This document shows positions 6,587 through 61,979 of a DNA stretch of 64,000 nt, one piece after another. Source of the stretch: Macrostomum lignano (taxonomy: Eukaryota); assembly GCA_002269645.1 (NCBI GenBank), contig NIVC01000051.1:496001-560000 (forward strand), in the 5' to 3' direction. Positions within the stretch are counted from its first letter, which is position 1. Every line of letters begins with the position of its first letter. The notes below the pieces were generated by a model. The model made no database searches and had not been told where the DNA came from. It saw nothing but the letters and a program-made list of their open reading frames with translations. The translations under genes and the position numbers were made by a program.

Positions 6587-6967
6587 CTATGGTGACTTTT
6601 CTGGAACAATTCTATATAAGAAATTAAAAGAAAAAATCAAACATGACAAAACACATTAACTGTCAGCTACAGGAATGTAAAAGTATTAATATTTTGTTGC
6701 TAAATTTATTTTATAGCAATACTTACATGTAATTGATAAAAAAAATCTGAGGGATTATCACAGTAAAAATCAGAATCACAGCCATCTATCAATGTCAATA
6801 TCGTTAGCAAGAAAGCTTAAAATTAGCATGTTTACAGTTAGCAATGCTCAATATCTTCCAAAGCGTTGGAGTAACTTCGGTGATATAAGTACTAACATTA
6901 AAATACAAAATTTAAATTTGATTTTAGGAATAAATTATAGATTAACAGTTATTAATTATACTAGAAT

Positions 6968-7572
6968 GGTGGTTGGCCTGACTGGGCAGGAATTAAGTAC
7001 ACTGGGGGAGTGAGGTGGCTGGCCTGACTGGGCAGGAATTAAGTACACTAGGGGAGTGAGTTGGTTGGCCTTACTGGGCAGGAATTAAGTAAACTTGGGG
7101 AGTGAGGTGGCTGGCCTGACTGGGCAGGAATTAAGTACACTGGGGAGTGAGGTGGTTGGCCTGACTGGGCAGGAATTAAGTACACTGGGGGAGTGAGGTG
7201 GTTGGCCTGACTGGGCAGGAATAAGTACACTAGGGGAGTGAGTTGACTGGCCTGACTGGGCAGGAATTAAGTACACTGGGGGAGGAGGTGGCTGGCCTGA
7301 CTGGGCAGGAATTAAGTACACTTGGGGAGTGAGTTGGCTGGCCTGACTGGGCAGGAATTAAGTACACTGGGGGAGGAGGTGGCTGGCCTGACTGGGCAGG
7401 AATAAGTACACTGGGGGAGTGAGGTGGTTGGCCTGAATGGGCAGGAATAAGTACACTGGGGGAGGAGGTGGCTGGCCTGACTGGGCAGGAATAAGTACAC
7501 TGGGGGAGGAGGTGGCTGGCCTGACTGGGCAGGAATAAGTACACTTGGAGAGTGAGTTGGCTGGCCTGACTA
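6968..7572. repeat. ~42-46-bp G-rich minisatellite in the CYBA-COG7 spacer
   Basis: Unit ggcctgactgggcaggaattaagtacactgggggagtgaggtggct, about 13 copies. Confidence 0.95.
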
Positions 7573-7660
7573 GGGCTTCAATTATTTTCGTATCTCAGAA
7601 TTGAATATGGACTGTATTAGTAGATAAAGATTTAATTACACAGAGTTTAGTTTTGCAAAA

Positions 7661-9234
7661 TCAATAATTAGAGAATCCGCCACTATTAGTCAGTTCAGTT
7701 TGCGACTGCGGCATAGGCGGCGGCTGCGTTGGTAAACTCATACCTCGGCCACCTGCCGGCAGATAAGCTCTATTCTTGGCATCAGATTCTGGTAGGCAAA
7801 ACTTCTCTCCGCGTAGTGTAGCAGCTAGATAAAGACAGGCCGATATTAACAAAGACAATGACGGCGCAGTCAATGGTAGGCAGAACAGGCAGGGCAAAGC
7901 TACAACCAGATGGAGAACGCATCGAGTGTACAGCTTGCCAATTAGTGGCCACCGAAACAGAGGGTACAGACGGCTTTGCCAGCGTCTCTCGACTTTGAAG
8001 GCCCGGGGATACTCCAGCAGGGCTAGCAGTGGGCCCAGCAATAAGCCGTAGATTCCCAGGCCCCAACGAGAGCCGCCAGCGGCAATGGCGAATACGCTGG
8101 AGGCGGTGAGAATGCCAGCAGATAGCAGGCTGTTCTCATTGGCTAGCGGGGAGATTTCCTGCGGAATTGTGTTTGATCGAATAATGGGCGGGTGCACACA
8201 TTGCACACGTACTTCGATTCGCTTATCTACTGTATTACCATCTACCTATTTGAGCATAGTCTACCTATGGAGTCTACCATATCTGATATTTTCTAAGAAA
8301 CCTACACGTGGAGTCTATCGAATCTCTTATCAGAGTCTACCCTATCTACTATCATAGTCTACCATATCTACCATCAGAGTCCACTCTATCTACTATCAGA
8401 GTCTACCCTATCTACTATCAGAGTCAGCCTGTCTACTATCGGAGTCTACCCTGTCTACTATCGGAGTCTATCCTATCTACTATCGGAGTCTACCCTATCT
8501 ACTATCGGAGTCAGCCTGTCTACTATCGGAGTCTACCCTGTCTACTATCGGAGTCTATCCTATCTACTATCGGAGTCTACCCTATCTACTATCGGAGTCT
8601 AGCGTATCTACTATCGGAGTCTACCCTGTCTACTATCAGAGTCTATCCTATCTACTATCGGAGTCTACCCTATCTACTATCGGAGTCTACCCTATCTACT
8701 ATCAGAGTCTACCCTATCTACTATCGGAGTCTACCCTATCTACTATCGGAGTCTACCCTATCTACTATCGGAGTCTACCCTATCTACTATCGGAGTCTAC
8801 CCTATCTACTATCAGAGTCTACCCTATCTACTATCGGAGTCTACCCTATCTACTATCGGAGTCTACCATATCTACTATCGGAGTCTACCCTATCTACTAT
8901 CGGAGTCTACCCTATCTACTATCGGAGTCTACCCTATCTACTATCAGAGTCTACCCTATCTACTATCGGAGTCTACCCTATCTACTATCAGAGTCTACCC
9001 TATCTACTATCGGAGTTTACCCTATCTAAGATAACCTACTTATGGAGTCTACCATATCCTTGATGAGACAGCACTTTAATCTAATTAATGCTATTAAATA
9101 TTAACTAAACTATACAAATAACTATTAACAAAAGGAATTTATATTAAGAGTAGAAAGAGTAACGTTTATTTAAAAAGACAATGCCACGGGGAGCGCAAAC
9201 TCATGGACGCACCAATAGGAAAATGCTGAGCCAT
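7661..9234 (-). CDS. CYBA: Cytochrome b-245 light chain (p22phox); preferred model joins a 22-nt exon 9213-9234 to exon 7661-8142
   Basis: ANENSLLSAG...LLEYPR...YTRCVLHL...LYLAATLRGE...PTQPPPMP aligns to p22phox (WANEQALASG, LLEYPRG, YVRAVLHL, IYLLAAVRGE, PPSNPPPRP). The main exon has no in-frame ATG. Micro-exon ATG GCT CAG CAT TTT CCT ATT G|gtgcgt is phase-compatible with ctag|CCAATGAG (504 nt total). The first exon is less certain than the identity. Confidence 0.88.
8308..9060. repeat. 22-bp minisatellite in the predicted CYBA intron
   Basis: Unit gagtctaccctatctactatcg, about 30 copies. Confidence 0.96.
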
Positions 9235-9439
9235 TTGTAAATTTAACAAACCATATAAATTAATAATAGAAAATTAAGTTTTTAAATAGTAAAACAAGTA
9301 CCGCTGTATTGAATAATAATGATATAAAATACTACTACAAGTATCAGTAGTACAAAATGCAAACGCTTAGAATACGAGTATAACTCGGGAGAACAAAATA
9401 TTTATTAAAAAACTGCTTTGTCTGTCTCACAAATTCACA

Positions 9440-9900
9440 GTTGATACCAAATCTACCCAGATTGGACACCAAATCTACCCAGATTGGACACCAAATCTAC
9501 CCAGATTGGACACCAAATCTACCCAGATTGGACACCAAATCTACCCAGATTGGACACCAAATCTACCCAGATTGGACACCAAATCTACCCAGATTGGACA
9601 CCAAATCTACCCAGATTGGACACCAAATCTACCCAGATTGGACACCAAATCTACCCAGATTGGACACCAAATCTACCCAGATTGGACACCAAATCTACCC
9701 AGATTGGACACCAAATCTACCCAGATTGGACACCAAATCTACCCAGATTGGACACCAAATCTACCCAGATTGGACACCAAATCTACTCAGATTTGACACC
9801 AAATCTACCCAGATTTGACACCAAATCTACTCAGATTTGACACCAAATCTACTCAGATTGGACATCAAATCTACCCAGATTGGACACCAAATCTACCCGA
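9440..9900. repeat. 22-bp minisatellite in the FANCI-CYBA spacer
   Basis: Unit ttggacaccaaatctacccaga, about 20 copies. Confidence 0.97.
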
Positions 9901-9950: not shown

Positions 9951-23722
<13,772 letters not shown>

Positions 23723-25013: not shown

Positions 25014-26910
25014 TCATCTACCCGAGTCAAACTGCAATCGGCGGGCAACCTTAGCAGCGGGCGGAACAGACAAACCGCCCCCGCTACCGCCGTTCGAGCC
25101 GGGCAAAATGTGATTCCTCGTAGTGGCTGATTGGTTGCTATGGTAACTAGCAACGCCGCCGATAACGCCACCGTCGAATCCGCGACCGCCGCCACCGCCC
25201 AGAGGAATTTGCTGATTAGTGCAAGGAGCCGGCGGCATCACAAAGTAGGGCATGGTCAAGGCCTCAGCTGCGGTCAGCCTGCAGTTATTGAGTCAGAGGC
25301 TGCCTTTTTGAGCTGAGTTTTGTCTTACTAAATGACCAACTAACTGACCAACTAACTAACTAACTAACTAACTGACAAGCTAACTAAAAAACGGACTAGC
25401 TAAATAACTAACTAAATGACTGACTAGATAACAAACTAACCAACCTCTTAGCCGGATTAAGTCTCAACAGGCCCTGCATCAGGTCCAGCAGATCATTTGT
25501 AGCAGCCGTGAACACATCGTGCAGCGGTACTGGTTGGCACTCCTTAAACTGCAGATAATTCTCCAGCTGAGCAACCTCAGGCCAATCCTCTAAATTAGGC
25601 GTGCCCAACAGGTGATAGATTTTCGACAGCTGCATGATATCCGACTCGCCTGGGAACAGCGCAGTTCGACGCAACAATTCGGCAAAGACACAACCGGCGG
25701 CCCACATGTCAACGCCTGGGCCATAAATTTTGGCGCCTAGCAACAGTTCGGGGCATCTGTACCAGCGGGTCACCACTTGGTTTGTCAGTGGCCGGTTGGG
25801 ACTGCCGTACATGCGGGCCAGACCGAAGTCGCCGAGCTTCACCTTTCACAATTTTTAGTTTTATTTTATGAATTAGGAAACTATTTTAGATGTCGAGAAC
25901 AGGATATTGGGGGAGATTTTTGAGAATGGGATATTGGGGAGATGATGGGGATGGGAAATTGAGATGCTTCTCGAGAATGGGATACTTTATTGGAATATTG
26001 GGGATGTTATAGGGAATGTGATATTGAAGAGATTATCGAGAATGGAATATTTGGGGGAGATTATCGAGAGGGGGATATTTGGGGGAGATTATCGAGAGGG
26101 GGATATTTGGGGGAGATTATCGAGAATGAAATATTTGGTTGGGAATGGGATATTTGAGGGAGATTATCGAGAATAAGATATTAAAGAGAGATGATCGAGA
26201 ATTAGATATTTGGGGGATTTAATCGGGAATCGAATACTGTATTGGGGAGAGATTCTCGGAAATGTGATATTGGGGAGAAATTATCGGGAATGGGATATTG
26301 GGGAGAATCTGACAGTCAAAGAATCGAAAAAGATAGATTAGAGGAATTAGAAGCGGATATTAATATTGTACACTGGGAAGACTTCAGGAGCGTAAAGATA
26401 AGGATATGTCTAGAAGGCATTAATTATAAAGCAATAGGTATGAGGTACACACACCTGACCAGTAGCGCTAACAAAGATATTGTTACTCTTAATGTCCCGA
26501 TGCAGCACAAAATTAGCGTGCATATAATCCAGGCCGCGCAGGCACTGCAGCATAATATTCTTAATGTGACTAGGGGACAGCACTACACTCTGATCGTGCA
26601 CCAGCTTCTCCAAATCTGTGTGCATAATTTCGAAGACTAGATTAACATTGCCATCATCGCCGAATGCGTCAAGCAATCTGATGACATTGTCGTGCAACAG
26701 TTCGCGAAGCAGTTTAATCTCTCTAAGCGCGGTCCGGTTCACACCATCGGCAATGTCTTCTCGGGTGCCGGACTTCACTTTCTTAATGGCAACCAAGCGG
26801 CCATTGTGCGTGTCGCGAGCCTTGTACACCAGAGCGTACTGGCCCTCGTCAAAGTAATCAATTTTTTCGTAGCGTCGACTCTTTGGATTGGCAGCCAGTA
26901 ATGTGTCCAT
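25014..26910 (-). CDS. CDK7: Cyclin-dependent kinase 7 (exons 26455-26910, 25445-25842, 25014-25278)
   Basis: CDK7 signature [11 protein letters not shown]; VAIKK; HRDIKSNN; [25 protein letters not shown] with the Ser164/Thr170-equivalent sites; C-terminal ARRLQF. Junctions keep phase (0, 2). Confidence 0.93.
25870..26325. repeat. Degenerate gggagattatcgagaatgggatatt repeat in CDK7 intron 1; intron 2 (25330-25440) holds (TAAC)n
   Basis: Read directly. Confidence 0.8.
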
Positions 26911-27481
26911 GGTGACATCAGCCAAGTTCATTTGAATAGAATTGAACAATCAATTATAAAGTTTTATTTGTGCCACAGAGAGGTTCACTATAGAATTGAT
27001 TTTTTCACTGATAGAATCTTGCTAATGTAACACTAAAACAGATTTTTATCAAAAGACTTTTCTTATTTTTTCATCTTTGATGAGAATTTAATTTCATCTT
27101 TTTATTTATCAAGCTCAAAATGACCAAATAACAAATAGAGGGATGCCTTAAGCTTTGATTAATCAATAAACTTAGACTTCTACAACTTCAATGGGTTAGA
27201 GAAGCTTAACTATATAAAGGGTAGGAACAGCATCTTGGTTGCTATTTAGAGTTTTTTAAATTCATAAAGGAATAGATATATAAAAAATGAAGTTGTTAAA
27301 TAGACAATTAATCTATTAATAAGGCCTAAGTAATTTTAAAAATCTATTATATCTATTATCTACTATCTAATATGTTAACCATTATGCAGAATTTTAATAA
27401 TATGTGTCTTGCTTATTTGTACTTTTCATATTTGGCCACATATTCTCGATAGACATTTTCTTTGAATAGATCAGATACCAA

Positions 27482-46598: not shown

Positions 46599-48280
46599 TT
46601 ACTGAATAAGCATTTCGAACTCTTTCATTGAGTAGGCATAGCCGAAGCGATAGTACCAACTGATGCCAGTGCCAAACGTGGGAACTCTGGCAGCCTCAGG
46701 CAGATTGTAGTAGAGTCCATTCCCATTGACGAGATGACATGCACGGTGCCACCAGGCTCCTTTGTAGATTTGAGGGCAGTTGCCTGCTAACAGATCATTA
46801 TCCGAGTCGAAGGTACTAAAACGCAGACCATTGTGAGTCGCCATCGAATCGCCAACCTGGTTTGATGAGCTCGAAAACCCGAACACCCTTAGACGAAATT
46901 TGTCAGTCTCGTCGGCAACAGAGAAGCTGCTGTACTCAGCCCAGTGCTCAGTGTCGTCCCACTTCTTCATACGTACGCGAAGAGTTCGAGCAGTTGGCGA
47001 AGTGAGCCAGTGAAGAGTTCGAAGGCCTGGAGTTGCAGAGATTTCGCATTTTATTTGATTTGATCGACTGGCATGATCGAACCGCAATAAAAAAGATCTG
47101 TCGGAAATGTCAAGGGTTGAAAAAGGCCGTAAATAAGGTCGTGCATTTTCGCAGCTCAACATCCACTTGCTCATGGTTGCTGTCGATCTGGACAAGGTGA
47201 CGCAAACCGTCTGTTTGACTACATACTAACCACGGCCAGCTCTTCTTAACTGGCTTACGTTGCTGCTTATGCTTACCTACTCTAGCCTATCAACCCGAGC
47301 TGGATAATATGCTGCTTTCTGAGCTATTCTAGATATCATAATATCAACATCAAGTATTTTTTGTATGGATTCATGTGAATTTTGCGCTTATTTTCGACTT
47401 GATGAAAACGGTTTCGCTACTAAAATTGAGAAGTATTTCCTAGATAACTGGAAAATTCATCTACATCTCAACATACGCACCAATCCAGAAGTTCCTGCTC
47501 GGCTCCTGACCAAATCCGACAGCATAGTCAGTCCAGTTCCGGTAGAAGTCAGTCGTATTGTCCACTCTGTGCTGAATTGTAGTCCAGCAGGTTTCCAGTG
47601 ACGTCACAAAAACCTGTAATAAATACATGTAACTCAATTGAGATAGAGTTTCAAGAAAAGAAACAGGTGGTAAATCACCAAATCAGTCAACTTACTTTCA
47701 TCGATGGTGTCTTGTCTAGTTTCATGGGGCTGTTTCTCGGCAGTTTGAGGCAGCGAGCTCGATAGGCTAAAAAAGCGCGTTGGTTTTCGATGAATTAAAG
47801 TTGAACCAATTAAGCTTCAAACAAAAATGAATGAAAGGAAAGCGTCCTTAAAGGCAGAGGAGATTAGAGAGAATAGAGCTGAATAGGAGACACAAAATCG
47901 AGCGTGCCGCATTGCCATTGTGAAGTTTCAAAGGACCCCGAGGACCGGATAGAGAGGCTTGGCGGGCCGTTGATTATGCCGACCCTTGAGCTAAGTTCAT
48001 TTTTGCGCTATTTCTGATATTATATTATAACCGACTCACCAAAGAAGCATTGGGGTTCTACTACTCGACTTCCACCGATGAAGACAAGAAGCTGATTGCT
48101 AAGCAGGTACTTGGCTGCAAAAGCAGTGCACTGCAACAAACTGTTTGCTTGGTTGGCGAACGATAGACTGAACTGGCGCACCTTATCACCTGACCAACTC
48201 GGGCTGTCAACTTCGTGCAGCTCAACAGCTGCAGCGACTGCTACTGAGCACAGAGTCAGCAGAGCTAGAAGCCGCTGCAT
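46599..48280 (-). CDS. Secreted fibrinogen-related domain protein (exons 48040-48280, 47696-47766, 47481-47613, 46599-47026)
   Basis: Signal peptide MQRLLALLTLCSVAVAAA; WTTIQHR...DFYRNWTDYAVGFG...FWIGLRTLH; FSTFDSDND, NCPQIYKGAWWHRACH, GISW. All three junctions keep phase. Confidence 0.9.
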
Positions 48281-49630: not shown

Positions 49631-50030
49631 TGCAGGAAAGTATTTACTATGCAGGTTAAAAATGATTTTAAGACGTAAAACCGAAGCTATCAGCTCTGTA
49701 CATATATAAAGTTGTCTATGGCGAATCATAGAATGGCGAATCATAAATCATAGCCTTCAATCATTCATTGTTGAAGAGTGAGAATAAAATTTAAATTAAA
49801 ATGAAACCTTCATGTCGCATTTAGCGAGAATTTAGCAATCAAAGTGTTGTTTCGTCTTTCTTCATGTCGCATAGTATTAGACAGCTCGTATAGAGCAAAG
49901 AAACATGAATAGAATTGTTTAGTTTTAATCCGTTTTACTGCATTTGCTCGTGTATGAAAAGTCGTATTGAATGGGTATATAATTTTCGTTGATTGTGGAG
50001 TTTCATCCAATTAATAAGCTCCTATTCAAT

Positions 50031-53000
50031 CAGTGGTTCAATTCTTGAGCCACTTGCACGGCGTTCTCCAAATCCCAGCAGATTCTGTCCAGCAGGTGCT
50101 TCACAGCCTCCGATGAAGCGCTGGTGGCCGAATCCACGGACTGAGTGTACGGATTGTACAACAGTACCTGCCTTCGCCTTAAAGTCTTCGCGAAATGCCT
50201 AAAACCGCATAGAAAAGTCTGTAAAATGTATAATATAGATATTTGAGGAATTCTTGAAATGCCTCACCTAAGTTTTTCCTTAGCTTCTGTGAAGCTGTTT
50301 GTAAAGAAGTACATGTCCTGAAAAGTGGTCACCTTGCACTCCTGCTGTAAAACGATTGCTGGATCGAATTTGCATATTTTAGCCCGGTCACTGACTGCGT
50401 GCTAAAATTGTTAATTGTAGTTATATACTAAGTTCTATTAGAACTCATATAGTAAAAATAAAATTTTAATGCAGAGTTTTTCAAGCCAATCAAGCTTAGA
50501 AGCTGGCTGCAGTTATCGATCTGGGAATTTGGGCTTGCAATCAATACTTTCTGAAGTAACGCTTTGCGAGTGGGGTGACTGTTGAGCTTGTTATGTTGGA
50601 GTTTTACTTTCAATTAAAATTTAGCAGTGCTGGAAAGTGTAGTGAGTGAAACGAGGCTAGACTGCTCGTTGTAGTCGATAGTTGCCGAAAGCTTGCAGGC
50701 GAGAATAATAGCGATGAGTATATTTATTGAATTATTGAGCTGAGTCAGAATGGTGATCAAATTTGCACCATGCACATTTGATGTTGTACGCATAAGGGTT
50801 GAGCTAGCAGAGTCACGCGGCGCAGCCGCTAACAACCCCCCAACACACACGATAGTAGGCGCTGCCTACACTTCTCCCCCCCAAAGGAATTAAAAAAAAC
50901 TTCGAACTAAAGAAAATTAACTGCAATGCGGATCAGTTACTTAGCTCGTATAGCACTTCGGCGTGTCGCGGGCTGCTCTTGGATGCCGTCTCTGAGCCAC
51001 AGACTCTGCTTCTTGACTAGCGGCCTGGCCGGCTGACTGGCCGGCGGACTGGCCGGCTGATTGACCGGCTGACTGGCCGGCTGACTGGCCGGCTGACTGG
51101 CCGGTGGACTGGCCGGCGGACTGACTGGCTGACTGGCCGGCGGACTGGCCGACTGACTGGCCGGCGGATTGGCCGGCGGACTGACTGGCTGACTGGCCGG
51201 CGGACTGGCCGGCTGACTGGCCGGCGAACTGGCCGGCTGACTGGCCGGTGGACTGGCCGGTGGACTGGCCGGTGGACTGGCCGGTGGACTGGCCGGTGGA
51301 CTGGCCGGTGGACTGGTCCGACGGTTCCATCAGAGGCCGCAGCTGAGTCACGTGCCGCATACAAGACTGCTGGCCTCGCCGTAGGATGCAGGTGTCGCCT
51401 CGAACCTCCTGCACCGTCCATGGCTGAGTTTCGAATGGCAGCTGCGTTTTTTCGCGTGCCTGCTGCTTGCGAAGAACACCCATGCCGGGAACGATGCGGT
51501 GCTCCTTTGCGGCCGTGCGCCTGTCGAACGCATTCTTCATCTGCTGCGTGTACCGCCGGTTCCAGTCCTTCACGGCTTCCTGGCTGACATCAGATGACTT
51601 CGGCTGCCTGCTGGCTGGGATTCCGTCGTTGATCGGCCTGCCCATGAGGAGCTCGGCCGGAGTCCGCCCAGTTGCTCGGTGAGGCGTTGTGCGGAACGCC
51701 AGAAGCCAGTCGTTGACTGCATGATGTCGACTTTCGGGTACTTGGAGTACAGGTCCGTGGTGACCAGCAGCATCTGACCTTGCACCGGGCCGTAGAAGTC
51801 CATGCCGAGCAGTTGCCAAGGTCCGTCCGGCATCTCCGTCGGCTTCAAAGGCGTCTGGTGCACGTGCGTGGCCGCTGCTTGGCAACCGACACAGCACTTG
51901 ACGAATACTTCTCAGTCGCTGCGCATCTTTGGCCACCAGACTTTGGTCTGCAGTCGCTTCAGGGTTCTGTCCGCACCGAGATGTCCCGTATGGGCCAGCT
52001 GCAGTATCGGTCTCCGCAGCGACTCGGGGACAACGATGAGATCTCCGCGGAGCAGAATTCCGTCGCTCTCGGAAAGTTCGCTGCTGCTGGACTTGAGTGC
52101 GCGTTGCACCGGGTCGAGCATGTTCCAGCTGCCGGTTCTGATCGCGCTGAGCGCAGCCTGGATCTCCGTTTCAGTCCTTGAAGAGTCTCGGATCTGCTGA
52201 AGGCTGAATCCCTTTGGCACGGCACCTGCTGACACGGCACTGATGAATGCCGCATCGATGACCTCGCCGATGTTTGGCCTGAGCTCCGGTAGCGGCTGGC
52301 GGCTCAGCAGATCGGCCGGATTGGCAGGTCCCGGCCGGTACAACAAAGTGAAGCGCAGGTGCTGGATGCGGAGGGCCATCCGCTCGATGCGCGGCGGAGG
52401 GCGGGACCCCGGCTTGAAGAGCGGCACAAGAGGTCGATGGTCCGTCACGACGGTGAAGTTCGGGTCGCCTGCCAGATAATGCTCGAACTTCAGGCAGGCA
52501 AACTTGATGGCCAGCGCCTCCCGCTCGATCTGAGCATAGCGCTGCTCCACTGGCGACAGAGCTCGGCTGGCGTAGGCCACGGGTCTGCTGCTGCCGTCTG
52601 GCTGCTTCTGGGTGAGGATGGCGCCGAGACCGATGGGAGATGCGTCCACCAGAAGCTCCGTCTGCCGCTTGCGGTCGAAGAACGCCAGCGTGTCGGCTCC
52701 GGCGATGGCCTTCTTGATTGTGCTGAATGCCTCAGTGTGGCTGGCAGTCCATTCCCATGGCTGACCCTTCTTGGTCAATTGGCGCAGCGGGGCTGACACG
52801 TCGGCGAATCTTGGGATAAATTTCGCCAGAAAGTTTGCGGTGCCGAGAAACGACCGAACTTCTGAGACATTGGCGGAAGTCTTGCATTGCGCGGATTTTC
52901 TCAGCAGCTGGTTGGATGCCTTTGGCTGACAGGTGCATCCCGAGAAATTCAACAGCCGGTTTGGCGAACTTGCACTTGTCCTTGTTCAGCGTGATGCCGA

Positions 53001-56000
53001 ATTCGCGGAGGCGGTGAATGCGGGATCGCGACCGAGTATTGTGAGACCATCGCCATCCATGATGTGGAAGGGCACGACGGTGCTGACTGCTCCGACGCGA
53101 ACTTCCAGGTCGGCGATTCCGAAGATGTTGAGTGGTGCAGAGCAGCCATAGGCTCTGACTTCCGATTCTGGAGTTCGCAGGTGAGGCCGATTGAGCGTCT
53201 TGAAAGTGCGGCTGCTCATAATGCTGCAGCTGGCACCGCTGTCGATCATCATCGAGAGCTGCCGACTTCCCACTTGGACTTTCAGCGAGACCTCAGCCGG
53301 GTAGGTGCCGTTTCTGTGCAGGGTGAACACGTCTTCGCTGGCGACGGCGTCAGGGACCGTGCAGTCTGCGTTGGCGTGGATCTGCTGCCGGGCTCTGCTG
53401 CCGGCTGAGCGCGGTTGACGGCACGCCTTGGCCAGGTGATTTGGCTTACCGCAGTTATTGCAGATCCTGCCCCTGGCTGCGTCGCAGGTGGCGTGGCCAC
53501 GCTCGCCGCATCGGTAGCAGATGTTCATCTGGCTCGGCTTTGATCTCGGTTCGCTGGCGGGTCCGCGTCTGTTTGTCGCTGTTTTGCTGCTCCTGGCCAG
53601 GCTAGCTACCTGGGCGTCGGTGGTCTTCTCCATCTCAGCAGCCTGATCTTCCGCAGCCTCGAATGCTCTGGCCTTCCGCAGGGCATCCTCCAGCGTGATG
53701 CCTGCTTCTTGGAGCAGCCGTCTGCGCAGTTTGTCGGAGGTGCATGTCGCGACGAGCTGGTCCCGGATGAGCGAGTCCCTCAGGTTTTCGAATTCGCACG
53801 GTTCGGCTGCCGCCCGCAGTCTGCTGTGCCAGGCCTCGATTTTCTTACCGGCTTGTTGGATGCACAGGCGAAATTGGTATCTCGCAAAAACAATGTTTTT
53901 CCTGTCGTCGAAATGGCGCTTCAGTCCGTCGAAGATGCTGGCCAATGTGTGCTCCTTCTCTTCGCCTTCAACCTGAGGCTTTGGTAGCTCGCGAACGATA
54001 TCAGAGACCTCCTTTCCGGCAGTGTAGCAGAGCAGCTTGCACTTCTGGTTCTCATTTGCAACTCCGGACGCCTCGATAAAGTCTGTGAAGCGCGCTGCCC
54101 ATTCGCACCAACGCTTGCCAGCGTTGTGAGGGTCGTCGGAGATGACAAATGGTTCGGGGGGCGGTAGCGCGATGTAATTTGTGGCCATGCCCCACGCTGG
54201 ATGCGGTTGCTTGCGACGCCACTGTAGTGAGTGAAACGAGGCTAGACTGCTCGTTGTAGTCGATAGTTGCCGAAAGCTTGCAGGCGAGAATAATAGCGAT
54301 GAGTATATTTATTGAATTATTGAGCTGAGTCAGAATGGTGATCAAATTTGCACCATGCACATTTGATGTTGTACGCATAAGGGTTGAGCTAGCAGAGTCA
54401 CGCGGCGCAGCCGCTAACAACCCCCCAACACACACGATAGTAGGCCCTGCCTACAGAAAGATTGAAATCGAACCCAATCAATGCTCAGGGAATTCTTCAT
54501 CTGCCATATCCGTGTTTTGTCTAATAAAATCTGTTATTGTCAATGGCCCAAGGCTAGAAGAACTGTGAAGGGCGGACTGCGTGCCCAAATTTTCGGATGA
54601 ATGCTCCACAGGCCCCCTTCTGTGCCATTAACAGTGAAAACCAAGTCTTCAATAGCTTGACTCTTCATTGAGGATTTAAATGCTTGCTCCTAGGCTAAAT
54701 TGGCTTAGAAAAGCCAATGGTTCTGTACCTCAAATTCGTCCACACAGGCTAACAGACCAGCTCCGTACGCTTTCAAATGGCCGGCCTCTTTGCAGAAACC
54801 AAACTCAACGGTGAAGAAGTAGCACTAAAAAAGGTATCAACTCTGTAAATTAAAACTGCGTGGTCGCATAACATGCAGTTGTAGCAAATAAAAGCTATAA
54901 CGTACAGTAGCGAGCTTCTTGACGTCCTCCTCTGACGCGCCGAGCGATGCCAAGCCGATCTCTTGAGAGAAGTGCGCAAATGTTGGATCTGCCAGCATTG
55001 GAACGTGACCAAGTAGTTCGTGACAGCAGTCTCTGTAACCAACGGTAAAAGCAGGTGAGTATCCAAGGAGAGCAGCCATTGAGGAGAAGTCCAGCTCATC
55101 TGTGCAACTCACGGCTCAGGTGTATAGAACGGCTTCTCCCAGTGCCTGATGTACTGAGTGCAGCAGAAGACCCTCAGCGCCAGAGCTGAGAGAAAGTCCC
55201 GAGCAGACAGGTAGCCAGCGACGGGACGGAGCGTGAAGCCGGAGCGGCGTCTCACAAAGTCGGAGACGTCGCGCAGCTGCGGAATGCGGTCGCTCCTTCG
55301 AGGGGTAAAAGGAGCTGTATCGTTTTTGGTAACTTTACGATAGGAAAAGTGGGCTTGCAGGTTTATGAAGTTAATGATCGCTTGAGTTGCTTGTCAATGG
55401 GCTTTTGCCGCAGAAATAATAAATATTAGCTTCATATTTCTTTTTCACTACTTGTTAGTAGTCGTTATTTTTTTGTCCAAATATTTCACGGTCTCTACGA
55501 ACTTTAAAAGCCTGTTTCTAGAACACGAACATACTATTTGACTATAAACCATATTAAACTTAACATTTGTGTACCACTTGATATCGTTCAAGCCCTGAGG
55601 ACTACAACGTATGCATAATGCTAGTCACATACTTAGTAGAACAGAATGTTTGAAACATACCTGTACAGGCCGATCTCTCTCAGCTCCTTGAAGTTCTCCA
55701 AGAACTCTTTGCAAGCGTGCTTATCGTAGAGTTCGCACAGACGGTTGAACACGATGGACCAGGTTCGATTCTCCTCTTCAGTGTAGTCCACCAGCGGAAT
55801 GGGCTGGTCGTGCTTGTAGTCGAAGGCCAGTTGGGCAAACATTTTTCTTCGCGTTTTGTACTGCTCGTCTTGCATGCTCTGCCAGAAAGAGTTCAATGAG
55901 TAATTATTTGCATGGAGTAATTGCATCAAATGGTCGAACATTGTTTGTTGCAAAAACTTACAGGATGATCAATGCTTTGCTCTTCAACTTGGAAGACACT

Positions 56001-56914
56001 GCCAACCACTTGATCCAGGTCAGCAGGTCGTTTTGGAAACCAAATTTCTTCGTCTTTATATTGATTTTGAGCGTGTTTTGTTAGAATGCTTTCAAGATAA
56101 ATAAACAAATTCGAAAATAAATAGCATTGCTAAGACCTTAAACCTTACCAGTATCGCAGACAAGCTTCACAGCTTTAGATGTCGTATTTTTAGTGTCCTC
56201 AAAAGCCAAAACCTTCAGTCCCAAGTTGGAAAGCTGGTGAATCGCTCTGTCCTTTTCCAAATGATCACTTGGGGGACGCACGTCCACCACTAAGTCGGTT
56301 GGGCAGCCGTTTTGCTGACTTGATCGATGCGATTCCAAGTGGATCAGTGAGAAACCGGCATCCTGCAATAACATTAGTCATTTGTTTGATTGGCTGCTAA
56401 GCATGTATATTGCGTAGTTATAAGTGTATACGAGTAAGTTAAACTTCATTTGTACTTGCTAATGATGCTCTTGGTCTGTTGGTCTACTGTCTATTGTATG
56501 GGTGCCCGTGTCTTTGATGTGGTTTCTCACTGTTAGTTGCATGGGTGCCCCTGTCTATTAGGTGCGTTGCCACTCTCTATTAGTATGTGGGTGCCCGCTC
56601 CTGTCTCTGAGAAGGGCCGTGACCTCCCCAGACCGTCTTCATAGGACACTGACAGTACGTGACCTTTACACGTACCCAAAAAATTATATTACCTGAATGC
56701 CTTGCAGAATATCACCCCATTGATCTGACGGCAGGTGAGCTACAATTCTTAAGCTATTCGTCTGCTCGGAGAGTTGACTGTTCGATTGCAGCATCAGTCG
56801 TTCGCGTAGCGATCCAGCCATTCGAAGTGCGGCCCCGCCAGCCAGTTCTAGGTAGGCACCGTCATTAACCTGGTCTCCAGTAGCAGTTGGTGATGTGCTT
56901 CTTCTATCGCTCAT
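50031..56914 (-). CDS. TPH: Tryptophan hydroxylase paralog A (exons 56693-56914, 56149-56362, 55962-56053, 55661-55878, 55113-55295, 54906-55032, 54729-54824, 50268-50401, 50031-50198)
   Basis: ACT-like N-terminus; [58 protein letters not shown] and QEC..TTFQD are TPH-type rather than PAH/TH-type; iron ligands His, His, Glu are present. Confidence 0.9.
50941..53010 (-). pseudogene. pol remnant: RT C-terminus, RNase H, integrase zinc finger, integrase tail
   Basis: [43 protein letters not shown]...C..C, MDFYGP; stop at 51912-51914; the integrase core is deleted (VDIMQST joins [13 protein letters not shown]); no YxDD seen. Confidence 0.88.
51020..51315. repeat. 12-bp in-frame repeat (QSAG/QSTG) in the integrase tail
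   Basis: ctgactggccgg / gtggactggccg units. Confidence 0.93.
52986..54188 (-). CDS. Gag-protease ORF (two CCHC knuckles, DSG protease); fused by deletion to the RT tail
   Basis: [34 protein letters not shown]; after ILGRD the sequence jumps to [15 protein letters not shown] in another frame. Confidence 0.9.
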   Translation of the reverse strand: MATNYIALPPPEPFVISDDPHNAGKRWCEWAARFTDFIEASGVANENQKCKLLCYTAGKEVSDIVRELPKPQVEGEEKEHTLASIFDGLKRHFDDRKNIVFARYQFRLCIQQAGKKIEAWHSRLRAAAEPCEFENLRDSLIRDQLVATCTSDKLRRRLLQEAGITLEDALRKARAFEAAEDQAAEMEKTTDAQVASLARSSKTATNRRGPASEPRSKPSQMNICYRCGERGHATCDAARGRICNNCGKPNHLAKACRQPRSAGSRARQQIHANADCTVPDAVASEDVFTLHRNGTYPAEVSLKVQVGSRQLSMMIDSGASCSIMSSRTFKTLNRPHLRTPESEVRAYGCSAPLNIFGIADLEVRVGAVSTVVPFHIMDGDGLTILGRDPAFTASANSASR

Positions 56915-57419
56915 CGCTTTTGGTAGAGACTTCCTAGGTCGTCAGTATTAATTACAAGTGGCCTTATTTATTTAGGGTGCTGTAGTTGCGAATCAGCTGT
57001 CTGGCTCGTGACGGCTGCTCGGGTGCCAATATAGCTCGTACCACGAGAGGTCACCACAAAAATTTGTGCAATTCTGAATGCAAAACACAGGGCTAGAACC
57101 GTTATTTGTTTAGAGGCTAAGTTACCCTGCATTCGAATCAAATTATATTGCCCGCAGTTATTCACTGTTAGAGTATCACACGTGAAACTCTTGCATACTG
57201 TCAGACAGGCGTGAAATGTAAACACAAAGTAGACCAAGTTGACAGGTTAACTTGACTGGGTCTTGCCTGATAGAATTTCTAGAAACGACTGCGTTCTGTT
57301 GCACCCTCCTCCCTTGGGAGGGGGGGCAACGAAGAAAGGAATAAAAAAATTGAATAAACTATGTACACGTAGGCTTTGACCTTGTACAATCTTTGTACAC
57401 AAACCTTGTATTGTTAGTT

Positions 57420-57590
57420 TCATGGAGTGCTAATAGCACGACATGGAGTGCTGATCCCATTTATACATGGAGTGCTAACAGAATCACGTGGAGTGCTGAT
57501 TGCATGACATGGAGTGCCGATCCCATTACATGTAGTGCTGATCGCGGAACATGGAGTGCCGATCGCATGACACGGAGTGCCGATCACAGG
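57420..57590. repeat. Degenerate ~20-bp repeat (catggagtgc(t/c)gat) between the TPH genes
   Basis: About 8 imperfect units. Confidence 0.7.
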
Positions 57591-58080
57591 AATAGACTAC
57601 TAAATATCACAAACCATGTAGGACATTATGTACTCAGCATATGTCATGAAATACATAGAATTTGTTTCATTCGTCATGGCTTTTGAGCATGTTCTCTTCA
57701 ATTCAATAACTTTAATTACGAAAGAATGAACTACACAGGCCTAAGAATTGCTCAATGACTCGCGTAACTTAACACTACATTGAGTGCACATGGTGGTATA
57801 TTTCAGTTGAAAATTTGCATCGGCACAAAGATTGATTTGCTTTAAAATGGTTGTTAACCATACAGTTTATTAATTGCCAATCAGATTTGAATAATACTAG
57901 ATGAATTAGGCATTGAGCGATAATTAGAAAATATGGCTATCCAAAAATATCTATTTTTGAAAATTACTATGATAATTAAAAGTATAGCTATAGAGTTACC
58001 AATACCGACACCAAAGTAGTTTCCTCATCGAACAGAACAGCAACCAGTTGATGGAGCATTAGCAGGCTCAAGCATAATCT

Positions 58081-61000
58081 TCAGCGCTCCAGACTCTTCA
58101 GCATTCGCTGTCCAACATCAAGGTCGAAACTGATGCGTTCGAATAGTCGACAGAGATCAGCGACGCTCGCGATTGTCTCAACAGACTGGGTGAACGGATT
58201 GTACACCAGCTGGTGGCGACGCTCCACTGATTGGAAAAACTTCCTGAAATTTATTTAATACGAACTTCTGCATAATTTCCATTAGCTATTCATAGAATAA
58301 TCGCTTCTTATGACGTCTTACCTTATCTTAGTCACGGCATCGGTGAAGCTTGATGTATAGAAGTAGCCATCCTGGAAGGTCGTAATCCGACACTCCTGCT
58401 TCACAACAAGTTCGGGCTCGAATTCGCATACGTTTGACTTTTCGCTGAGCGAATGCTAAAATGTTCAGATGGTGTAGAGTATAATTATTCTAAAATGCTA
58501 CTGTAAGTAGACTACTGCAAACATGCGCAGCAAAACATGCGCGGAAACTATGAAGCATGTTACTATTTAGAACAACGAATCTTCCTTCAGACCAAGTCAA
58601 CCAAGACTCGTCTGAGTTATTTGCGGTAAGCCTTACTCATTTGCCCTAGTTGTTTGAGTCGACTCAAGAGTGATATTGTGACTGAGTCTATTCGAGACTC
58701 TATTGGTTGTTAGTCTCCAGAAGGACTACCCTGATAGCCTACCGAAGACCATCAGTGATTACCGGAGCTATACCTAGAGTGGATTAAGCCACTGCTAGAA
58801 GGAGAAGGCTTATTTGAAACCGAAGCTTCCTATTGGACCGAACTACAGATTCCGGCCGAAGACAATTCGAGACAGATAAAAGGAACTTGGACCGGAACTA
58901 CAGAAGTCAGGCGCCTGCACTAACTGAATATAAGAAGTTCCGGAGAACTAATCACGAGAATTCAACACCTTCAAGGTAAGCGATAACATTGATTGATTAC
59001 TGGGTTGCCTATCAGTAGCTAGAAGTGATTGTTCCTTGATTACTAAGAAAGTCTTGGTATTAAGGAACACATCCATGGCATGGGTTAATAATGAGAATAC
59101 GAGCTAATTGCAGGAGGCTTGCGATCACATTAGCGCAACGTTTTTGGCGACATCGTCCCGCAAATGGCGCTGAAGCAATTCTGCCCATTCCACTGGCTCC
59201 TGAGCACACGCAAGCGCGTCAATACTGTACGCAGGCCGCACTCACACACACGCTCACACAGGGTCAAGCTGTACTCTCTGTGTTTTGGAGTTTGTCCCTC
59301 ATGGCTGTGAATCTCGCGACAACCCCAGGTCTAATAATGGGACCGCACACGGAATCAAACCAGATTGTCGTGGTGCGAGTCAGACATGGTTATCGCTAAA
59401 CTGCTCTGTACTCGTTAAAATGGGTTTAAAATCATTTTCTGCTCATTTTGACGAAGCATAGGGTTTAGCATGCCACTTGGCTCACCACAAGTTCATCAAC
59501 ACACGACAGTAGACCAGCGCCGTATACTTTCAGTTGATCAGCCTCCTTGCAGAGTCCGAACTCGACGGTGAAGAAATAGCACTGAAAAATCAAATTCGTT
59601 AATAAAGAACGATGGGCCACACGTTTTATCATCTGCTTGTAGCACAATCAAGTGTGCATCTAAGAGGTCAATCAAATAGCTGAGTTGACTAACCGTAGCG
59701 AGCTTCTTGACGTCCTCCTCTGACGCGCCGAGCGATGCCAAGCCGATCTCTTGAGAGAAGTGCGCAAATGTTGGATCTGCCAGCATTGGCACGTGACCAA
59801 GTAGTTCGTGACAGCAGTCTCTGTAACCAACGGTAAAAGCAGGTTAGTATCCAAGTAGAGCAGCCATTGAGAAGAAGTCCAGCTCATCTGTGCAACTCAC
59901 GGCTCAGGTGTATAGAACGGCTTCTCCCAGTGTCTGATGTACTGAGTGCAGCAGAAGACCCTCAGCGCCAGAGCTGAGAGAAAGTCCCGAGCAGACAGGT
60001 AGCCAGCGACGGGACGGAGCGTGAAGCCGGAGCGGCGTCTCACAAAGTCGGAGACGTCGCGCAACTGCGGAATGCGGTCGCTCCTGCGGCGGGGTGAAAG
60101 GTTTATAGATCTATTGGTTTATTGATAAAAAGTAGGCATTATCACTGCTAATAGGGGCCAGAGTAGTTTAGCCATTAACGCGTCATAATCTCACGTTAAA
60201 TGTCCAGTCTTGATTCCGTGATTCTCGCTAATGAGGGCCGACTACCGCTCAACAACAACTAGAAAATCAGTGCCTCTGTAAAACCTGTGTGAGTATTTGG
60301 CTGAGTTTGCTTCTGTTATGTGGATGTGTGCTCAGGTGTTAGCGGAAAGCACCTAATCCCTTTCTGAGCTGCCGTTGGGGGCTTGGGGGTGGTTTGTGGG
60401 GGTCGGGCGTTTTCCCGGCCCTAGTCGTCATGGCTGATGCAGTGGCTGCGTGCCCTTAGCTACTGTTCCCCACTCTCTTCTCTTCTTTGCTCTCTTCCCC
60501 CCTCCACTCACCTACTGCAACGTACCGAAAAGACAATCTCTTACTAATAAACTGTACGGTTACTGACACAGTAACCCAGGGACTACTTAAGTTTAAGTAA
60601 TCCCTGAAGTAACCTTCGATAAGCATCGCAAAAGACCCCAAAGACCCCAAATGCACTCAAGACACGTTTCAAAACCATCGGCTCTAATACACAAGTCGTA
60701 GACTGATAGCGAAATTATGTATCGCACTCAAGGCACATTTGTAAACTACGAGCGTAGTCATCGGTTTAATACAATAATGGTGTAATACAATCAAGTCTTG
60801 TTTGTAAACAACTCATCTGCTTCACCACAAAAGTAGTCTGATAGTTTGATTACTATATCAAGCTTGTTGCGTGATCGGACATTCTGTCTAGATATTCTTT
60901 GGCGGAAAAAGCATAACTATTTGCTTTCTCCCACTGCGCCCACTTGTCGCGTTGATTAGCAAACAAACTAACACTGCCAGGTATCTGTGAAACCGGTCAA

Positions 61001-61979
61001 ACTTCCTACCTGTACAGGCCGATCTCTCTCAGCTCCTTGAAGTTCTCCAAGAACTCTTTGCAAGCGTGCCTATCGTAGAGTTCGCACAGACGGTTGAACA
61101 CGATGGACCAGGTTCGATTCTCCTCTTCAGTGTAGTCCACCAGCGGAATGGGCTGGTCGTGCTTGTAGTCGAAGGCCAGTTGAGCAAACATTTTCCTTCG
61201 CGTTTTGTACTGCTCGTCTTGCATGCTCTGTTTAAGCAGGATATAGCGTGAAAGTGCCTGCTGAATTGCAATTTAAGGTAGAATATTGTCATAAAAGTCA
61301 AAAAGCCTCAAAGGTGCATCAGCTCACGGGATGATCAACGTCGTTCATCTGCTCCAGAAGCAGAACCCTGTTAATCACAATGTCCAAATCGGCTACGCTT
61401 TTCGGAAACCAAGTATTTTCGGCAACTGAAGTGAGCGAGTTTTGGAGTAAGGTTTCTGGGAAACAAATTACTTATATATATGTCAAGAGACTAAAGTGTA
61501 GTACCTGTCATTTTATCTCCCTCTACGTCACGACTGTCATGTAGAAAGCGCACGTCCTTGCCGCAGCTACTTAATAGCTGCAACGCAGACGAAGAGCACG
61601 TATCAGTGTCTTCTGGGAGACAGATTTGCACAAACAGGTCGAACGCTGTTGCAGTATCGTTTTCGCCCTTCTTCGAACGAAACTCAACCTTTTCAATGGC
61701 TGCATTGGCAGTCTGGAATGAAGTTTTGGGTCGTATATAACATGATAAAGCATATAAGACGCTTACTACTGTAAATAAACAAAAACTAACTTGGATAGCT
61801 TCAAAAACTTCTCCCCATCTTGAGACTGGCAGGCTGACAACCACAGCAGCCGTTCGCGACCTTTCTGGCGTCTTCTTCGAGGTCACTTTGCCTGCGTTGA
61901 GCTCCTTGCGTACACTACTTGTCAGATTGTTCGCTGCCTCACTGATGGCGACTAGGTGAGCTAGTGATGCAACTTTCAT
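58081..61979 (-). CDS. TPH: Tryptophan hydroxylase paralog B (exons 61791-61979, 61505-61712, 61328-61465, 61010-61227, 59901-60083, 59694-59820, 59486-59581, 58322-58455, 58081-58243)
   Basis: Same nine-exon layout as paralog A; [41 protein letters not shown]; junctions keep phase. Confidence 0.9.

What the first reader, a model, noticed from the sequence alone, without database searches (positions are those of the whole stretch)
54906..61227. Two old TPH paralogs with a near-identical catalytic core bounded by exon edges
Exon 4 differs at 3 of 218 nt (55661-55878 vs 61010-61227). Exon 5 + 80-nt intron + exon 6 differ at about 6-7 of 390 nt (54906-55295 vs 59694-60083). Identity collapses at the outer splice sites. 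The intron between the two blocks is unrelated, exon 7 is clearly diverged, and exons 1-3 and 8-9 are barely alignable as DNA. This points to ongoing gene conversion of the active-site core while regulatory (ACT) and oligomerisation ends diverge: one catalytic module with two regulatory shells. Including the 80-nt intron argues for DNA-level conversion or a partly spliced template.
Basis: partly seen in the sequence, partly recalled or inferred. Interest (0 to 1): 0.7.

Follow-up and report, generated by a model that had tools for sequence, protein, structure and literature searches.

The report
Gene conversion between tandem flatworm TPH paralogs
Two old, side-by-side tryptophan-hydroxylase-like genes of the flatworm Macrostomum lignano share three almost identical middle exons plus one small intron, most likely because one gene was copied onto the other; this kind of event is well known, and here it is unusually clean.

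Summary
Two intact nine-exon genes lie head-to-tail on the minus strand: B at 61979-58081 and A at 56914-50030. Both encode TPH-like aromatic amino acid hydroxylases. The organism is Macrostomum lignano, or something very close to it.

Exon 4 differs at 3 of 218 nt. Exon 5 + intron 5 + exon 6 differ at 7 of 390 nt. Silent sites in exons 1-3 and 7-9 are saturated (pS 0.63-0.81), but dS is about 0.05 in exons 4-6. Intron 5 differs by 3.75%, which matches that dS. No other intron aligns. All four identity edges fall within 3 nt of a splice site.

The best explanation is DNA-level gene conversion between the two loci, confined to the two longest uninterrupted stretches of homology. GC3 is raised in the shared exons, and an independent M. 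lignano protein model has identical cores in both halves.

- "Ongoing" conversion is not shown. Neutral divergence of the shared blocks (about 4.5%) is no lower than the published 2.2% between subgenomes.
- The shared block covers only part of the catalytic domain. The third iron ligand and two pocket residues lie outside it.
- A template made from partly spliced RNA is not excluded, but it is less parsimonious.

This is a new example of a known phenomenon. Interest is modest.

The parts
58081..61979 (-). Gene B (upstream copy), a TPH-like aromatic amino acid hydroxylase of 471 aa with 9 exons: 61979-61791, 61712-61505, 61425-61328, 61227-61010, 60083-59901, 59820-59694, 59581-59486, 58455-58322, 58243-58081.
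   Evidence: All junctions are GT-AG and the ORF is intact. Pfam Biopterin_H E=1.6e-143. It is 97% identical to the first half of UniProt A0A1I8JF91 from M. lignano.
50030..56914 (-). Gene A (downstream copy), a TPH-like hydroxylase of 484 aa with 9 exons: 56914-56693, 56362-56149, 56053-55962, 55878-55661, 55295-55113, 55032-54906, 54824-54729, 50401-50268, 50198-50030.
   Evidence: All junctions are GT-AG and the ORF is intact. Pfam Biopterin_H E=6e-140. It matches the second half of A0A1I8JF91.
55661..55878 (-). Converted block 1 in gene A, equal to exon 4 (218 nt, 73 codons). Differences from B are at 55721 (K/R, the only replacement), 55834 and 55846.
   Evidence: 3/218 differences. dS 0.049, dN 0.006. 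Identity ends within 3 nt of both splice sites.
61010..61227 (-). Converted block 1 in gene B, equal to exon 4.
54906..55295 (-). Converted block 2 in gene A: exon 5 (55295-55113), intron 5 (55112-55033, 80 nt) and exon 6 (55032-54906). Differences are at 55276 and 55145 (exon 5, silent), 55084, 55068 and 55057 (intron), and 55002 and 54906 (exon 6, silent).
   Evidence: 7/390 differences and no indel. Intron 5 differs at 3/80 = 3.75%, against dS 0.045 and 0.071 in the flanking exons. Intron 5 Smith-Waterman z=43.
59694..60083 (-). Converted block 2 in gene B: exon 5 (60083-59901), intron 5 (59900-59821) and exon 6 (59820-59694).
55296..55660 (-). Intron 4 of gene A (365 nt). It separates the two converted blocks and is unrelated to B's intron 4.
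   Evidence: Smith-Waterman z=2.3 against shuffles. blastn with word size 7 finds nothing.
60084..61009 (-). Intron 4 of gene B (926 nt), unrelated to A's intron 4.
54729..54824 (-). Exon 7 of gene A (the B counterpart is 59486-59581). It was not converted and serves as an internal control. It carries the third iron ligand (Glu of TVEFG).
   Evidence: 78% amino-acid identity but 76% nucleotide identity, with pS 0.76.
50638..54455 (-). LTR retroelement inserted in intron 7 of gene A, in the same orientation as the gene. It is not part of the conversion, but it explains the 4.3-kb intron.
   Evidence: 233-bp LTRs (TGTAG...CTACA) with 1 mismatch and a 5-bp target-site duplication GAAAG. Pfam hits to gag zinc knuckle, aspartyl protease, RT-RNase H and integrase zinc domain. 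No reverse-transcriptase (RVT) family matched any of the three large ORFs.

Best explanation
A and B descend from an old DNA-level tandem duplication of an intron-containing TPH-type gene. They have diverged to saturation everywhere except in two islands: exon 4, and exon 5 + intron 5 + exon 6. These islands were homogenised by non-reciprocal homologous recombination (interlocus gene conversion) between the two genomic copies, which lie about 5 kb apart in the same orientation.

Heteroduplex or repair synthesis can only run as far as the two copies still pair. Every other intron has become unalignable, so each tract stops at a splice site. The 80-nt intron 5 sits between two conserved exons, is carried along with them, and therefore stays homologous. 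The unrelated intron 4 (365 vs 926 nt) splits the region into two separately converted islands.

Shown here: the mosaic, its edges, equal silent and intronic divergence, intact genes and raised GC3. Inferred: the recombination mechanism, the number of events (one episode or recurrent), and the direction of transfer. After conversion both copies stayed under purifying selection.
For: 1. Divergence mosaic. pS is 0.63-0.81 in exons 1-3 and 7-9, against dS 0.049, 0.045 and 0.071 in exons 4, 5 and 6. The longest identical run is 130 nt, against a permutation maximum of 41.
2. It is not protein constraint. Exon 7 has dN 0.10 but saturated silent sites. Intron 5 is homogenised to the same degree as silent sites, 3/80 vs 6/118.
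3. A genomic DNA donor is enough. Block 2 is collinear through an intron with no indel. Both genes keep intron 4 at the ancestral position, which the canonical M. lignano TPH locus L001 shares.
4. The converted pieces are the two longest uninterrupted homology blocks (218 and 390 nt, against 92-134 nt for exons 3, 7 and 8). They are also the most conserved exons across animal TPHs, at 75-77% identity.
5. GC3 is 0.71-0.72 in exons 4-6 against 0.52-0.54 in the other exons (Fisher p=5e-5 and 2e-4). The same exons of the canonical paralog show no such rise (0.62-0.64). This fits GC-biased conversion.
6. The genes are tandem and co-oriented. Partial concerted evolution in old linked paralogs has precedents (PMC2720389).
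7. Independent support comes from UniProt A0A1I8JF91, a different M. lignano gene model that differs from the window at about 0.9% of residues. Its 176-residue cores are 100% identical in the B and A halves.
8. Of the 7 exonic differences, 6 are silent (P=7e-4 under random placement). Both copies are therefore still under selection.
Against: - No second DNA copy (homeolog, allele or sister species) could be retrieved. The classic signature, in which the core groups by genome and the ends group by paralog, is untested.
- The two islands have the same neutral divergence. That would suit a single event, but a single DNA tract should also have homogenised intron 4, and it did not. Two tracts, or recurrent conversion, must be assumed.
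- The outermost 20-30 nt of the islands show no erosion of identity. Conversion must therefore reach the very edge of homology. Exon-exact edges at 4 of 4 boundaries are also what a transcript-derived template would give.
- The GC3 excess could partly reflect codon bias in conserved exons.
Confidence: 0.78

Rival explanations
1. Transcript-templated conversion. A partly spliced RNA, or a cDNA made from it, of one paralog had introns 3, 4 and 6 removed and intron 5 retained. It templated repair of the other paralog, so the tract edges are the exon edges of the template.
For: All four outer edges lie within 3 nt of splice sites. The two islands have equal neutral divergence, as expected from one template. 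The genes are tandem and co-oriented, and one public model joins them into a single B-then-A protein. An LTR retroelement has inserted recently at this locus, though this copy has no recognisable reverse-transcriptase domain. cDNA donors have been argued for fungal ribosomal-protein paralogs from dS being lower than the intron rate (PMC6993855).
Against: A template lacking intron 4 that converts across the exon 4/5 junction should delete the recipient's intron 4. Both genes keep it, with unrelated sequence. The model also needs retention of intron 5, which runs into a stop codon almost at once. Exons 3 and 7 would be on the same template but are not converted. Homology-limited DNA conversion explains the same edges with no extra assumption. 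No expression data are available.
Confidence: 0.08
2. One replacement episode rather than conversion at steady state. A single historical event, or a close pair of events near the genome duplication, pasted the exon 4-6 region of one gene into the other. There has been no exchange since.
For: Neutral divergence is similar in exon 4, exons 5-6 and intron 5, pooled at 4.5%. This is not below the 2.2% between subgenomes (PMC10733133). The island edges show no erosion.
Against: Before such an event, silent-site identity in the exons would have been as low as in exon 7 (76% nt). That is poor substrate for starting homologous recombination. The raised GC3 suggests repeated biased conversion. The K/R site differs between this copy and A0A1I8JF91, so there has been some change since the copies split, though a plain mutation would also explain it. 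This is a variant of the best explanation, not an alternative mechanism.
Confidence: 0.1
3. Assembly or polishing artefact. Reads from one paralog were used to correct the other, so the consensus was homogenised only where the copies cross-map, which is in the exons.
For: The M. lignano genome is triplicated and hard to assemble. 93% of read pairs map to several loci, and some paralogs are represented in error (PMC10733133). Cross-mapping would also stop at exon edges.
Against: Cross-mapping needs prior high similarity, yet the equally constrained exon 7 is only 76% identical. The 10 remaining differences are placed as biology predicts, with 6 of 7 exonic ones silent and the intron the most diverged. 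There are no Ns or junction anomalies. An independent protein model (A0A1I8JF91) has identical cores in both halves. Unique introns on both sides anchor any long read.
Confidence: 0.03
4. Extreme selection on the nucleotide sequence itself, for example an overlapping RNA element or an antisense gene, with no recombination.
For: None specific.
Against: Rfam finds nothing in 49-64 kb. Conservation covers 608 nt including an intron, while the adjacent, equally constrained exon 7 is saturated at silent sites. The canonical paralog shows no comparable constraint.
Confidence: 0.01

Closest known systems
Regional concerted evolution of old linked paralogs by gene conversion (human BMP8A/B, DDX19A/B, TUBG1/2; PMC2720389)
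   Same: Old duplicates lie close together on one chromosome. A subset of consecutive exons plus an intervening intron stays above 97% identical while the rest of the genes diverge. GC3 is raised in the converted part.
   Different: In the mammalian cases the tracts run through several introns and their edges are not tied to splice sites. Here all introns but one are unalignable, the tracts are cut into two exon-exact islands, and cross-species evidence is lacking.
CDS-restricted conversion of fungal ribosomal-protein paralogs, attributed to cDNA donors (PMC6993855)
   Same: Silent-site divergence is far below intron divergence, and introns are retained but unrelated in both copies.
   Different: Here one intron is homogenised with its exons, which a spliced cDNA cannot do. 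Only 3 of 9 exons are affected. The genes are tandem rather than dispersed.
Canonical bilaterian tryptophan hydroxylase (human TPH1/TPH2; M. lignano BOX15_Mlig010937g1; planarian TPH)
   Same: The three-part architecture is shared (ACT-like N-terminus, Biopterin_H domain, C-terminal helix). Intron positions are the same. The His-His-Glu iron triad and the TPH-type Phe in YFF are present. The best matches among solved structures and NCBIfam models are TPH.
   Different: A and B score 523-524 bits against a TIGR01270 cutoff of 705.5. Their core is only 64% identical to any TPH, whereas canonical TPHs share 75-77%. The near-invariant YGSELDADHPGFKD motif is reduced to (I/V)DHPSMQD, and RVFHCTQY is RVFCCTQY. 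B's N-terminal domain has no detectable relative other than A0A1I8JF91 among 1.84 billion representative proteins.

Membership tests
Biopterin-dependent aromatic amino acid hydroxylases (Pfam PF00351) | Significant full-length match to the Biopterin_H catalytic domain | tested here: met
   A scores 466 bits over residues 149-476 and B scores 478 bits over 137-461. The cutoff is 22.7.
Biopterin-dependent aromatic amino acid hydroxylases (Pfam PF00351) | 2-His-1-carboxylate iron triad (human TPH1 H272, H277, E317) | tested here: met
   The alignment to human TPH1 chain 5l01_A places H303, H308 and E348 of B at these positions. The same residues occur in A, and all are invariant in the 40-sequence alignment.
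Biopterin-dependent aromatic amino acid hydroxylases (Pfam PF00351) | N-terminal ACT regulatory domain and C-terminal tetramerisation helix | tested here: inconclusive
   Pfam ACT (PF01842) is not detected at E<=0.001. The AlphaFold2 model of B has a strand-helix-strand-strand-helix-strand unit at residues 42-119 (pLDDT 65-81) and a helix at 445-470, but its mean pLDDT is only 66. Foldseek aligns 440-470 columns to full-length TH and PAH structures at TM 0.47. A was not modelled.
Tryptophan 5-monooxygenase (NCBIfam TIGR01270 equivalog) | Score above the curated equivalog cutoff | tested here: not met
   A scores 522.6 and B 524.3 bits against a cutoff of 705.5. TPH is still the best model, ahead of PAH (430-438) and TH (426-438). 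The canonical M. lignano TPH scores 693.
Tryptophan 5-monooxygenase (NCBIfam TIGR01270 equivalog) | TPH-type substrate-pocket residues (Phe313 rather than the Trp of PAH; Tyr235, Arg257, Thr265, Pro268, Ser336, Ile366) | tested here: met
   With the offset from the alignment, B has Y266, R288, T296, P299, F344, S367 and I397. A has Ala at the Ser336 position and Val at the Ile366 position, both in unconverted exons. Which residues define the pocket is taken from my own knowledge of the TPH1 structures. Enzyme activity was not tested.
Interlocus gene conversion / regional concerted evolution | Significantly long near-identical fragments within an otherwise diverged paralog alignment, including silent sites | tested here: met
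   The best fragment scores 461 against a permutation maximum of 46. At third codon positions the identical run is 107 against a maximum of 28.
Interlocus gene conversion / regional concerted evolution | Non-coding sequence inside the tract is homogenised to the same degree as silent sites | tested here: met
   Intron 5 differs at 3/80, against 6/118 at silent sites.
Interlocus gene conversion / regional concerted evolution | In the tract, paralogs within a genome are closer to each other than to their orthologs or homeologs; outside it, the reverse | not testable with these tools
   No DNA of the other subgenome copies or of sister species could be fetched. Protein A0A1I8JF91 only shows that the cores are identical within that copy too.
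Interlocus gene conversion / regional concerted evolution | Raised GC at silent sites of the tract (GC-biased conversion) | tested here: met
   GC3 is 0.71-0.72 in the tract against 0.52-0.54 elsewhere, p<=2e-4. It is not raised in the canonical paralog. This is suggestive only.
cDNA/RNA-mediated gene conversion | Exons homogenised while every intron stays diverged, or the intron is precisely lost | tested here: not met
   Intron 5 is homogenised. No intron has been lost in either gene.

The most novel reading that the evidence does not exclude
The splice-site-exact edges at all four boundaries, the equal age of the two islands and the survival of an unrelated intron 4 may mean the template was a partly spliced transcript (RNA- or cDNA-templated repair) exchanged between two tandem paralogs that may be co-transcribed. 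That would be a natural animal example of transcript-mediated gene conversion that keeps the recipient's introns.
Probability: 0.08. Interest if true: 0.7.

Novelty: new member of a known kind. Interest (0 to 1): 0.3.

Why it matters
The locus is a very clean small example of partial concerted evolution. Exon 7 acts as an internal control, an intron lies inside the tract, and the barrier is known to the base. That makes it useful for teaching or for benchmarking conversion detectors.

It also matters for anyone building trees or dating duplications of flatworm monoamine-synthesis genes. The middle third of these genes will wrongly suggest a recent duplication.

The triplicated M. lignano genome offers three copies of the same pair. 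A simple comparison of these would time the conversion relative to the genome duplication and could separate DNA from transcript templates.

Biologically, M. lignano has two fast-evolving TPH-like enzymes besides its canonical TPH. Their regulatory domains are almost orphan sequences and their function is unknown.

Tried and rejected
- A search for relatives with gene A and then gene B proteins found only one close protein, UniProt A0A1I8JF91, which is a fused B+A model. Everything else was 62% identical or less.
- Exact-product look-ups found nothing on record for A0A1I8JF91, the exon 4 and exon 5 ORFs, B's N-terminal ORF, the neighbouring fibrinogen-domain ORF or the retroelement gag ORF.
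- phmmer with B's N-terminal ORF against 1.84 billion representatives returned only A0A1I8JF91 and two repetitive chance hits.
- A metagenome scan with exon 4 peptides found only distant hydroxylases at 42-44% identity, plus one short 19-residue match at 68%.
- Rfam found no RNA family that could explain conservation of intron 5.
- The roughly 17 nt of weak similarity at the 3' end of intron 4 was considered as a sign of tract spill-over. It is not significant (z=2.3).
- Retroposition was rejected as the origin of the pair, because all eight intron positions match the canonical gene.
- A literature search found no paper on TPH paralogs in Macrostomum.

Full report
**1. Observation**

- 55661-55878 and 61010-61227 differ at 3 of 218 positions. 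54906-55295 and 59694-60083 differ at 7 of 390, with no indel.
- A word-7 blastn between the two halves of the region finds only these blocks, a weak extension through exon 7, and two short hits in the 3' exons.
- The window contains only these two copies.

**2. Gene models**

Both genes are on the minus strand, head-to-tail. B (61979-58081) lies upstream of A (56914-50030).
- I built nine-exon models with canonical GT-AG junctions and intact reading frames, giving 484 aa for A and 471 aa for B.
- Block 1 is exactly exon 4. Block 2 is exon 5 (183 nt), intron 5 (80 nt) and exon 6 (127 nt).
- The canonical M. lignano TPH locus, fetched as L001, has introns at the same positions. Its intron 5 is 621 nt.
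- The pair therefore arose by DNA-level duplication of an intron-containing gene, not by retroposition.

**3. Identity of the genes and the organism**

- Both proteins match Pfam Biopterin_H at E<=1e-139.
- The closest solved structures are human TPH1 and TPH2, at 432 and 428 bits. TH scores about 370 and PAH about 364.
- The best NCBIfam model is TIGR01270 (tryptophan 5-monooxygenase) at 523-524 bits. PAH scores 430-438 and TH 426-438. The TPH score is well below the equivalog cutoff of 705.5.
- The iron triad and the TPH-type pocket residues are present.
- The only close database protein is UniProt A0A1I8JF91 from Macrostomum lignano, an 821-aa model that fuses B and A.
  - It differs from the window at about 0.9% of residues.
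  - That fits a homeologous or allelic copy. The DV1 genome holds three subgenome copies that differ by 2.2% overall and 1.1% in coding sequence (PMC10733133).
- The canonical M. lignano TPH (BOX15_Mlig010937g1) is only 62% identical to A.
- An AlphaFold2 model of B (mean pLDDT 66) shows an ACT-like strand-helix-strand-strand-helix-strand unit at residues 42-119 and a terminal helix at 445-470. Foldseek aligns it end to end with full-length TH and PAH.

**4. The mosaic**

Nei-Gojobori estimates per exon:

| Region | Silent sites | Replacement sites |
|---|---|---|
| Exons 1-3 and 7-9 | pS 0.63-0.81 (saturated) | dN 0.10-1.18 |
| Exon 4 | dS 0.049 | dN 0.006 |
| Exon 5 | dS 0.045 | dN 0 |
| Exon 6 | dS 0.071 | dN 0 |

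- Exon 7 is the key control. It is 78% identical in amino acids (dN 0.10), yet pS is 0.76. Protein constraint therefore does not preserve silent sites in these genes.
- Intron 5 differs at 3 of 80 positions (3.75%), the same as silent sites at 6 of 118. Pooled neutral divergence is 4.5%, with 95% CI 2.1-8.5%.
- All other introns and the flanks are unalignable, with z<=2.9 against z=43 for intron 5.
- Permutation of alignment columns never gives an identical run above 41 nt, against 130 observed.
- Outside the core, A and B are no more alike (24-47% amino-acid identity) than either is to TPH of molluscs, insects or fish. The split is deep, or both genes evolve fast.

**5. Edges**

In the alignment identity begins at the CAG acceptor of exon 4 and ends at the GTA of its donor. 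It begins again at the first base of exon 5 and ends one base before the end of exon 6. The outer 20-30 nt of the islands show no gradient of divergence.

**6. Mechanism**

- A fully spliced cDNA donor is excluded for block 2, because the intron is homogenised.
- A single continuous DNA tract from exon 4 to exon 6 is excluded, because intron 4 is unrelated (365 vs 926 nt).
- The simplest reading is DNA-level interlocus conversion that can only run where the copies still pair.
  - The two islands are the longest uninterrupted homology blocks (218 and 390 nt), against 92-134 nt for exons 3, 7 and 8.
  - They are also the most conserved exons in the family.
  - Intron 5 is short and enclosed by conserved exons. 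It is co-converted, so it never gets the chance to diverge.
- GC3 is raised in exons 4-6 (0.71-0.72 vs 0.52-0.54, p<=2e-4) but not in the same exons of the canonical paralog. This is what GC-biased conversion would give.
- Published cases of the same kind are BMP8A/B, DDX19A/B and TUBG1/2 (PMC2720389). Conversion restricted to coding sequence, with cDNA proposed as donor, is described for fungal ribosomal-protein genes (PMC6993855).
- A partly spliced transcript template would also give exon-exact edges and one common age. However, it should delete intron 4 when it crosses the exon 4/5 junction, and it needs retention of intron 5. I give it about 8%.

**7. Timing**

Neutral divergence of the islands (about 4.5%) is not lower than the divergence between subgenomes (2.2%). 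'Ongoing' conversion is therefore not demonstrated.
- The single replacement difference is Lys in A and Arg in B at B residue 218. It reads Lys in both halves of A0A1I8JF91.
- That is compatible with a private mutation in this copy, or with a later conversion in the other copy.
- The LTR retroelement in A's intron 7 is much younger, at 1 mismatch in 233 nt.

**8. What the shared block encodes**

The block covers B residues 166-341, which is 176 of the 325-328 residues matched by Biopterin_H. It holds both iron-binding histidines and, from my own knowledge of TPH1 structures, the pterin-binding and most substrate-binding residues. It does not include the iron-binding Glu (exon 7). It also leaves out the positions matching TPH1 Ser336 and Ile366, where A has Ala and Val and B has Ser and Ile. 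'One catalytic module with two regulatory shells' is therefore an over-simplification, and no adaptive explanation is needed.

**9. Artefact check**

- The window has no Ns.
- The remaining differences are distributed as selection predicts, with 6 of 7 exonic ones silent (P=7e-4).
- Exon 7 shows that cross-mapping similarity would not exist without real homogenisation.
- An independent protein model shows the same identical cores.
- Read-level confirmation was not possible with the tools at hand.

**10. Limits**

No DNA from other copies or species could be retrieved. The comparative test that would settle timing and template remains to be done. The expression and enzyme activity of A and B are unknown.

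**Verdict**

The gene-conversion reading is right in its main point. This is a new example of a known phenomenon, and interest is modest.

Noticed in passing
window 50638-54455 (minus strand): A young LTR retroelement sits in intron 7 of gene A, in the same orientation as the gene. It has 233-bp LTRs (TGTAG...CTACA) with 1 mismatch and a 5-bp target-site duplication GAAAG. Pfam finds gag zinc knuckle, aspartyl protease, RT-RNase H and integrase zinc domains, but no reverse-transcriptase (RVT) family matched any of the three large ORFs. It looks like an internally deleted, non-autonomous copy and could cut gene A transcripts short.
   Followed up: partly
window 51020-51316: A 12-nt tandem array (about 25 copies, consensus GCGGACTGGCCG) lies inside the retroelement where the integrase core would be expected. 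It reads as a QSTG/QSAG repeat in the ORF.
   Followed up: no
window 57421-57585: A 21/63-nt tandem repeat lies in the 1.17-kb spacer between the stop codon of gene B and the start codon of gene A.
   Followed up: no
UniProt A0A1I8JF91 (P0001) vs window 50030-61979: The only public protein for this locus fuses the two genes into one 821-aa product. It uses a different acceptor for B exon 3 and skips A exons 2-3. No separate model of either gene appeared among NCBI or UniProt proteins, so the genes look unannotated or misannotated in current M. lignano gene sets.
   Followed up: partly
window 61494-61979 (B exons 1-2) and 56149-56914 (A exons 1-2): The N-terminal regulatory regions are close to orphan sequences. 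A and B share 24% identity there, and each shares 7-21% with other TPHs. phmmer of the B region against 1.84 billion representative proteins finds only A0A1I8JF91. The B region is nevertheless predicted to fold like an ACT domain.
   Followed up: partly
window 55068 / 59856 (intron 5): One of the three intron 5 differences falls in the likely branch site. B reads TACTAAC, a perfect consensus, and A reads TACTCAC.
   Followed up: no
A and B proteins, exons 3-5: Both proteins depart from near-invariant hydroxylase motifs. YGSELDADHPGFKD is reduced to (I/V)DHPSMQD across the exon 3/4 junction, and RVFHCTQY is RVFCCTQY. The effect on activity is unknown.
   Followed up: no
window 1-1129, 6071-6588, 6968-7576, 8310-9028, 9430-9898, 10395-11291, 11659-12577, 15493-17038, 19187-20400: The first 20 kb holds many separate tandem-repeat arrays. 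One example is an 86-nt unit at 99% identity at 1-1129. They lie between exons of minus-strand genes, and several produce long spurious ORFs.
   Followed up: no
window 3329-6050, 17186-17743, 25408-26949, 46599-47195 (all minus strand): Other genes in the window, judged from exon-sized ORFs: COG7 (Golgi complex subunit), a FANCI solenoid fragment, a protein kinase, and a fibrinogen C-terminal domain gene 2.8 kb downstream of gene A.
   Followed up: partly
window 21678-21836 vs 22169-22327: A 159-nt inverted repeat at 98.7% identity with arms about 330 nt apart. It may be the termini of a small transposon.
   Followed up: no
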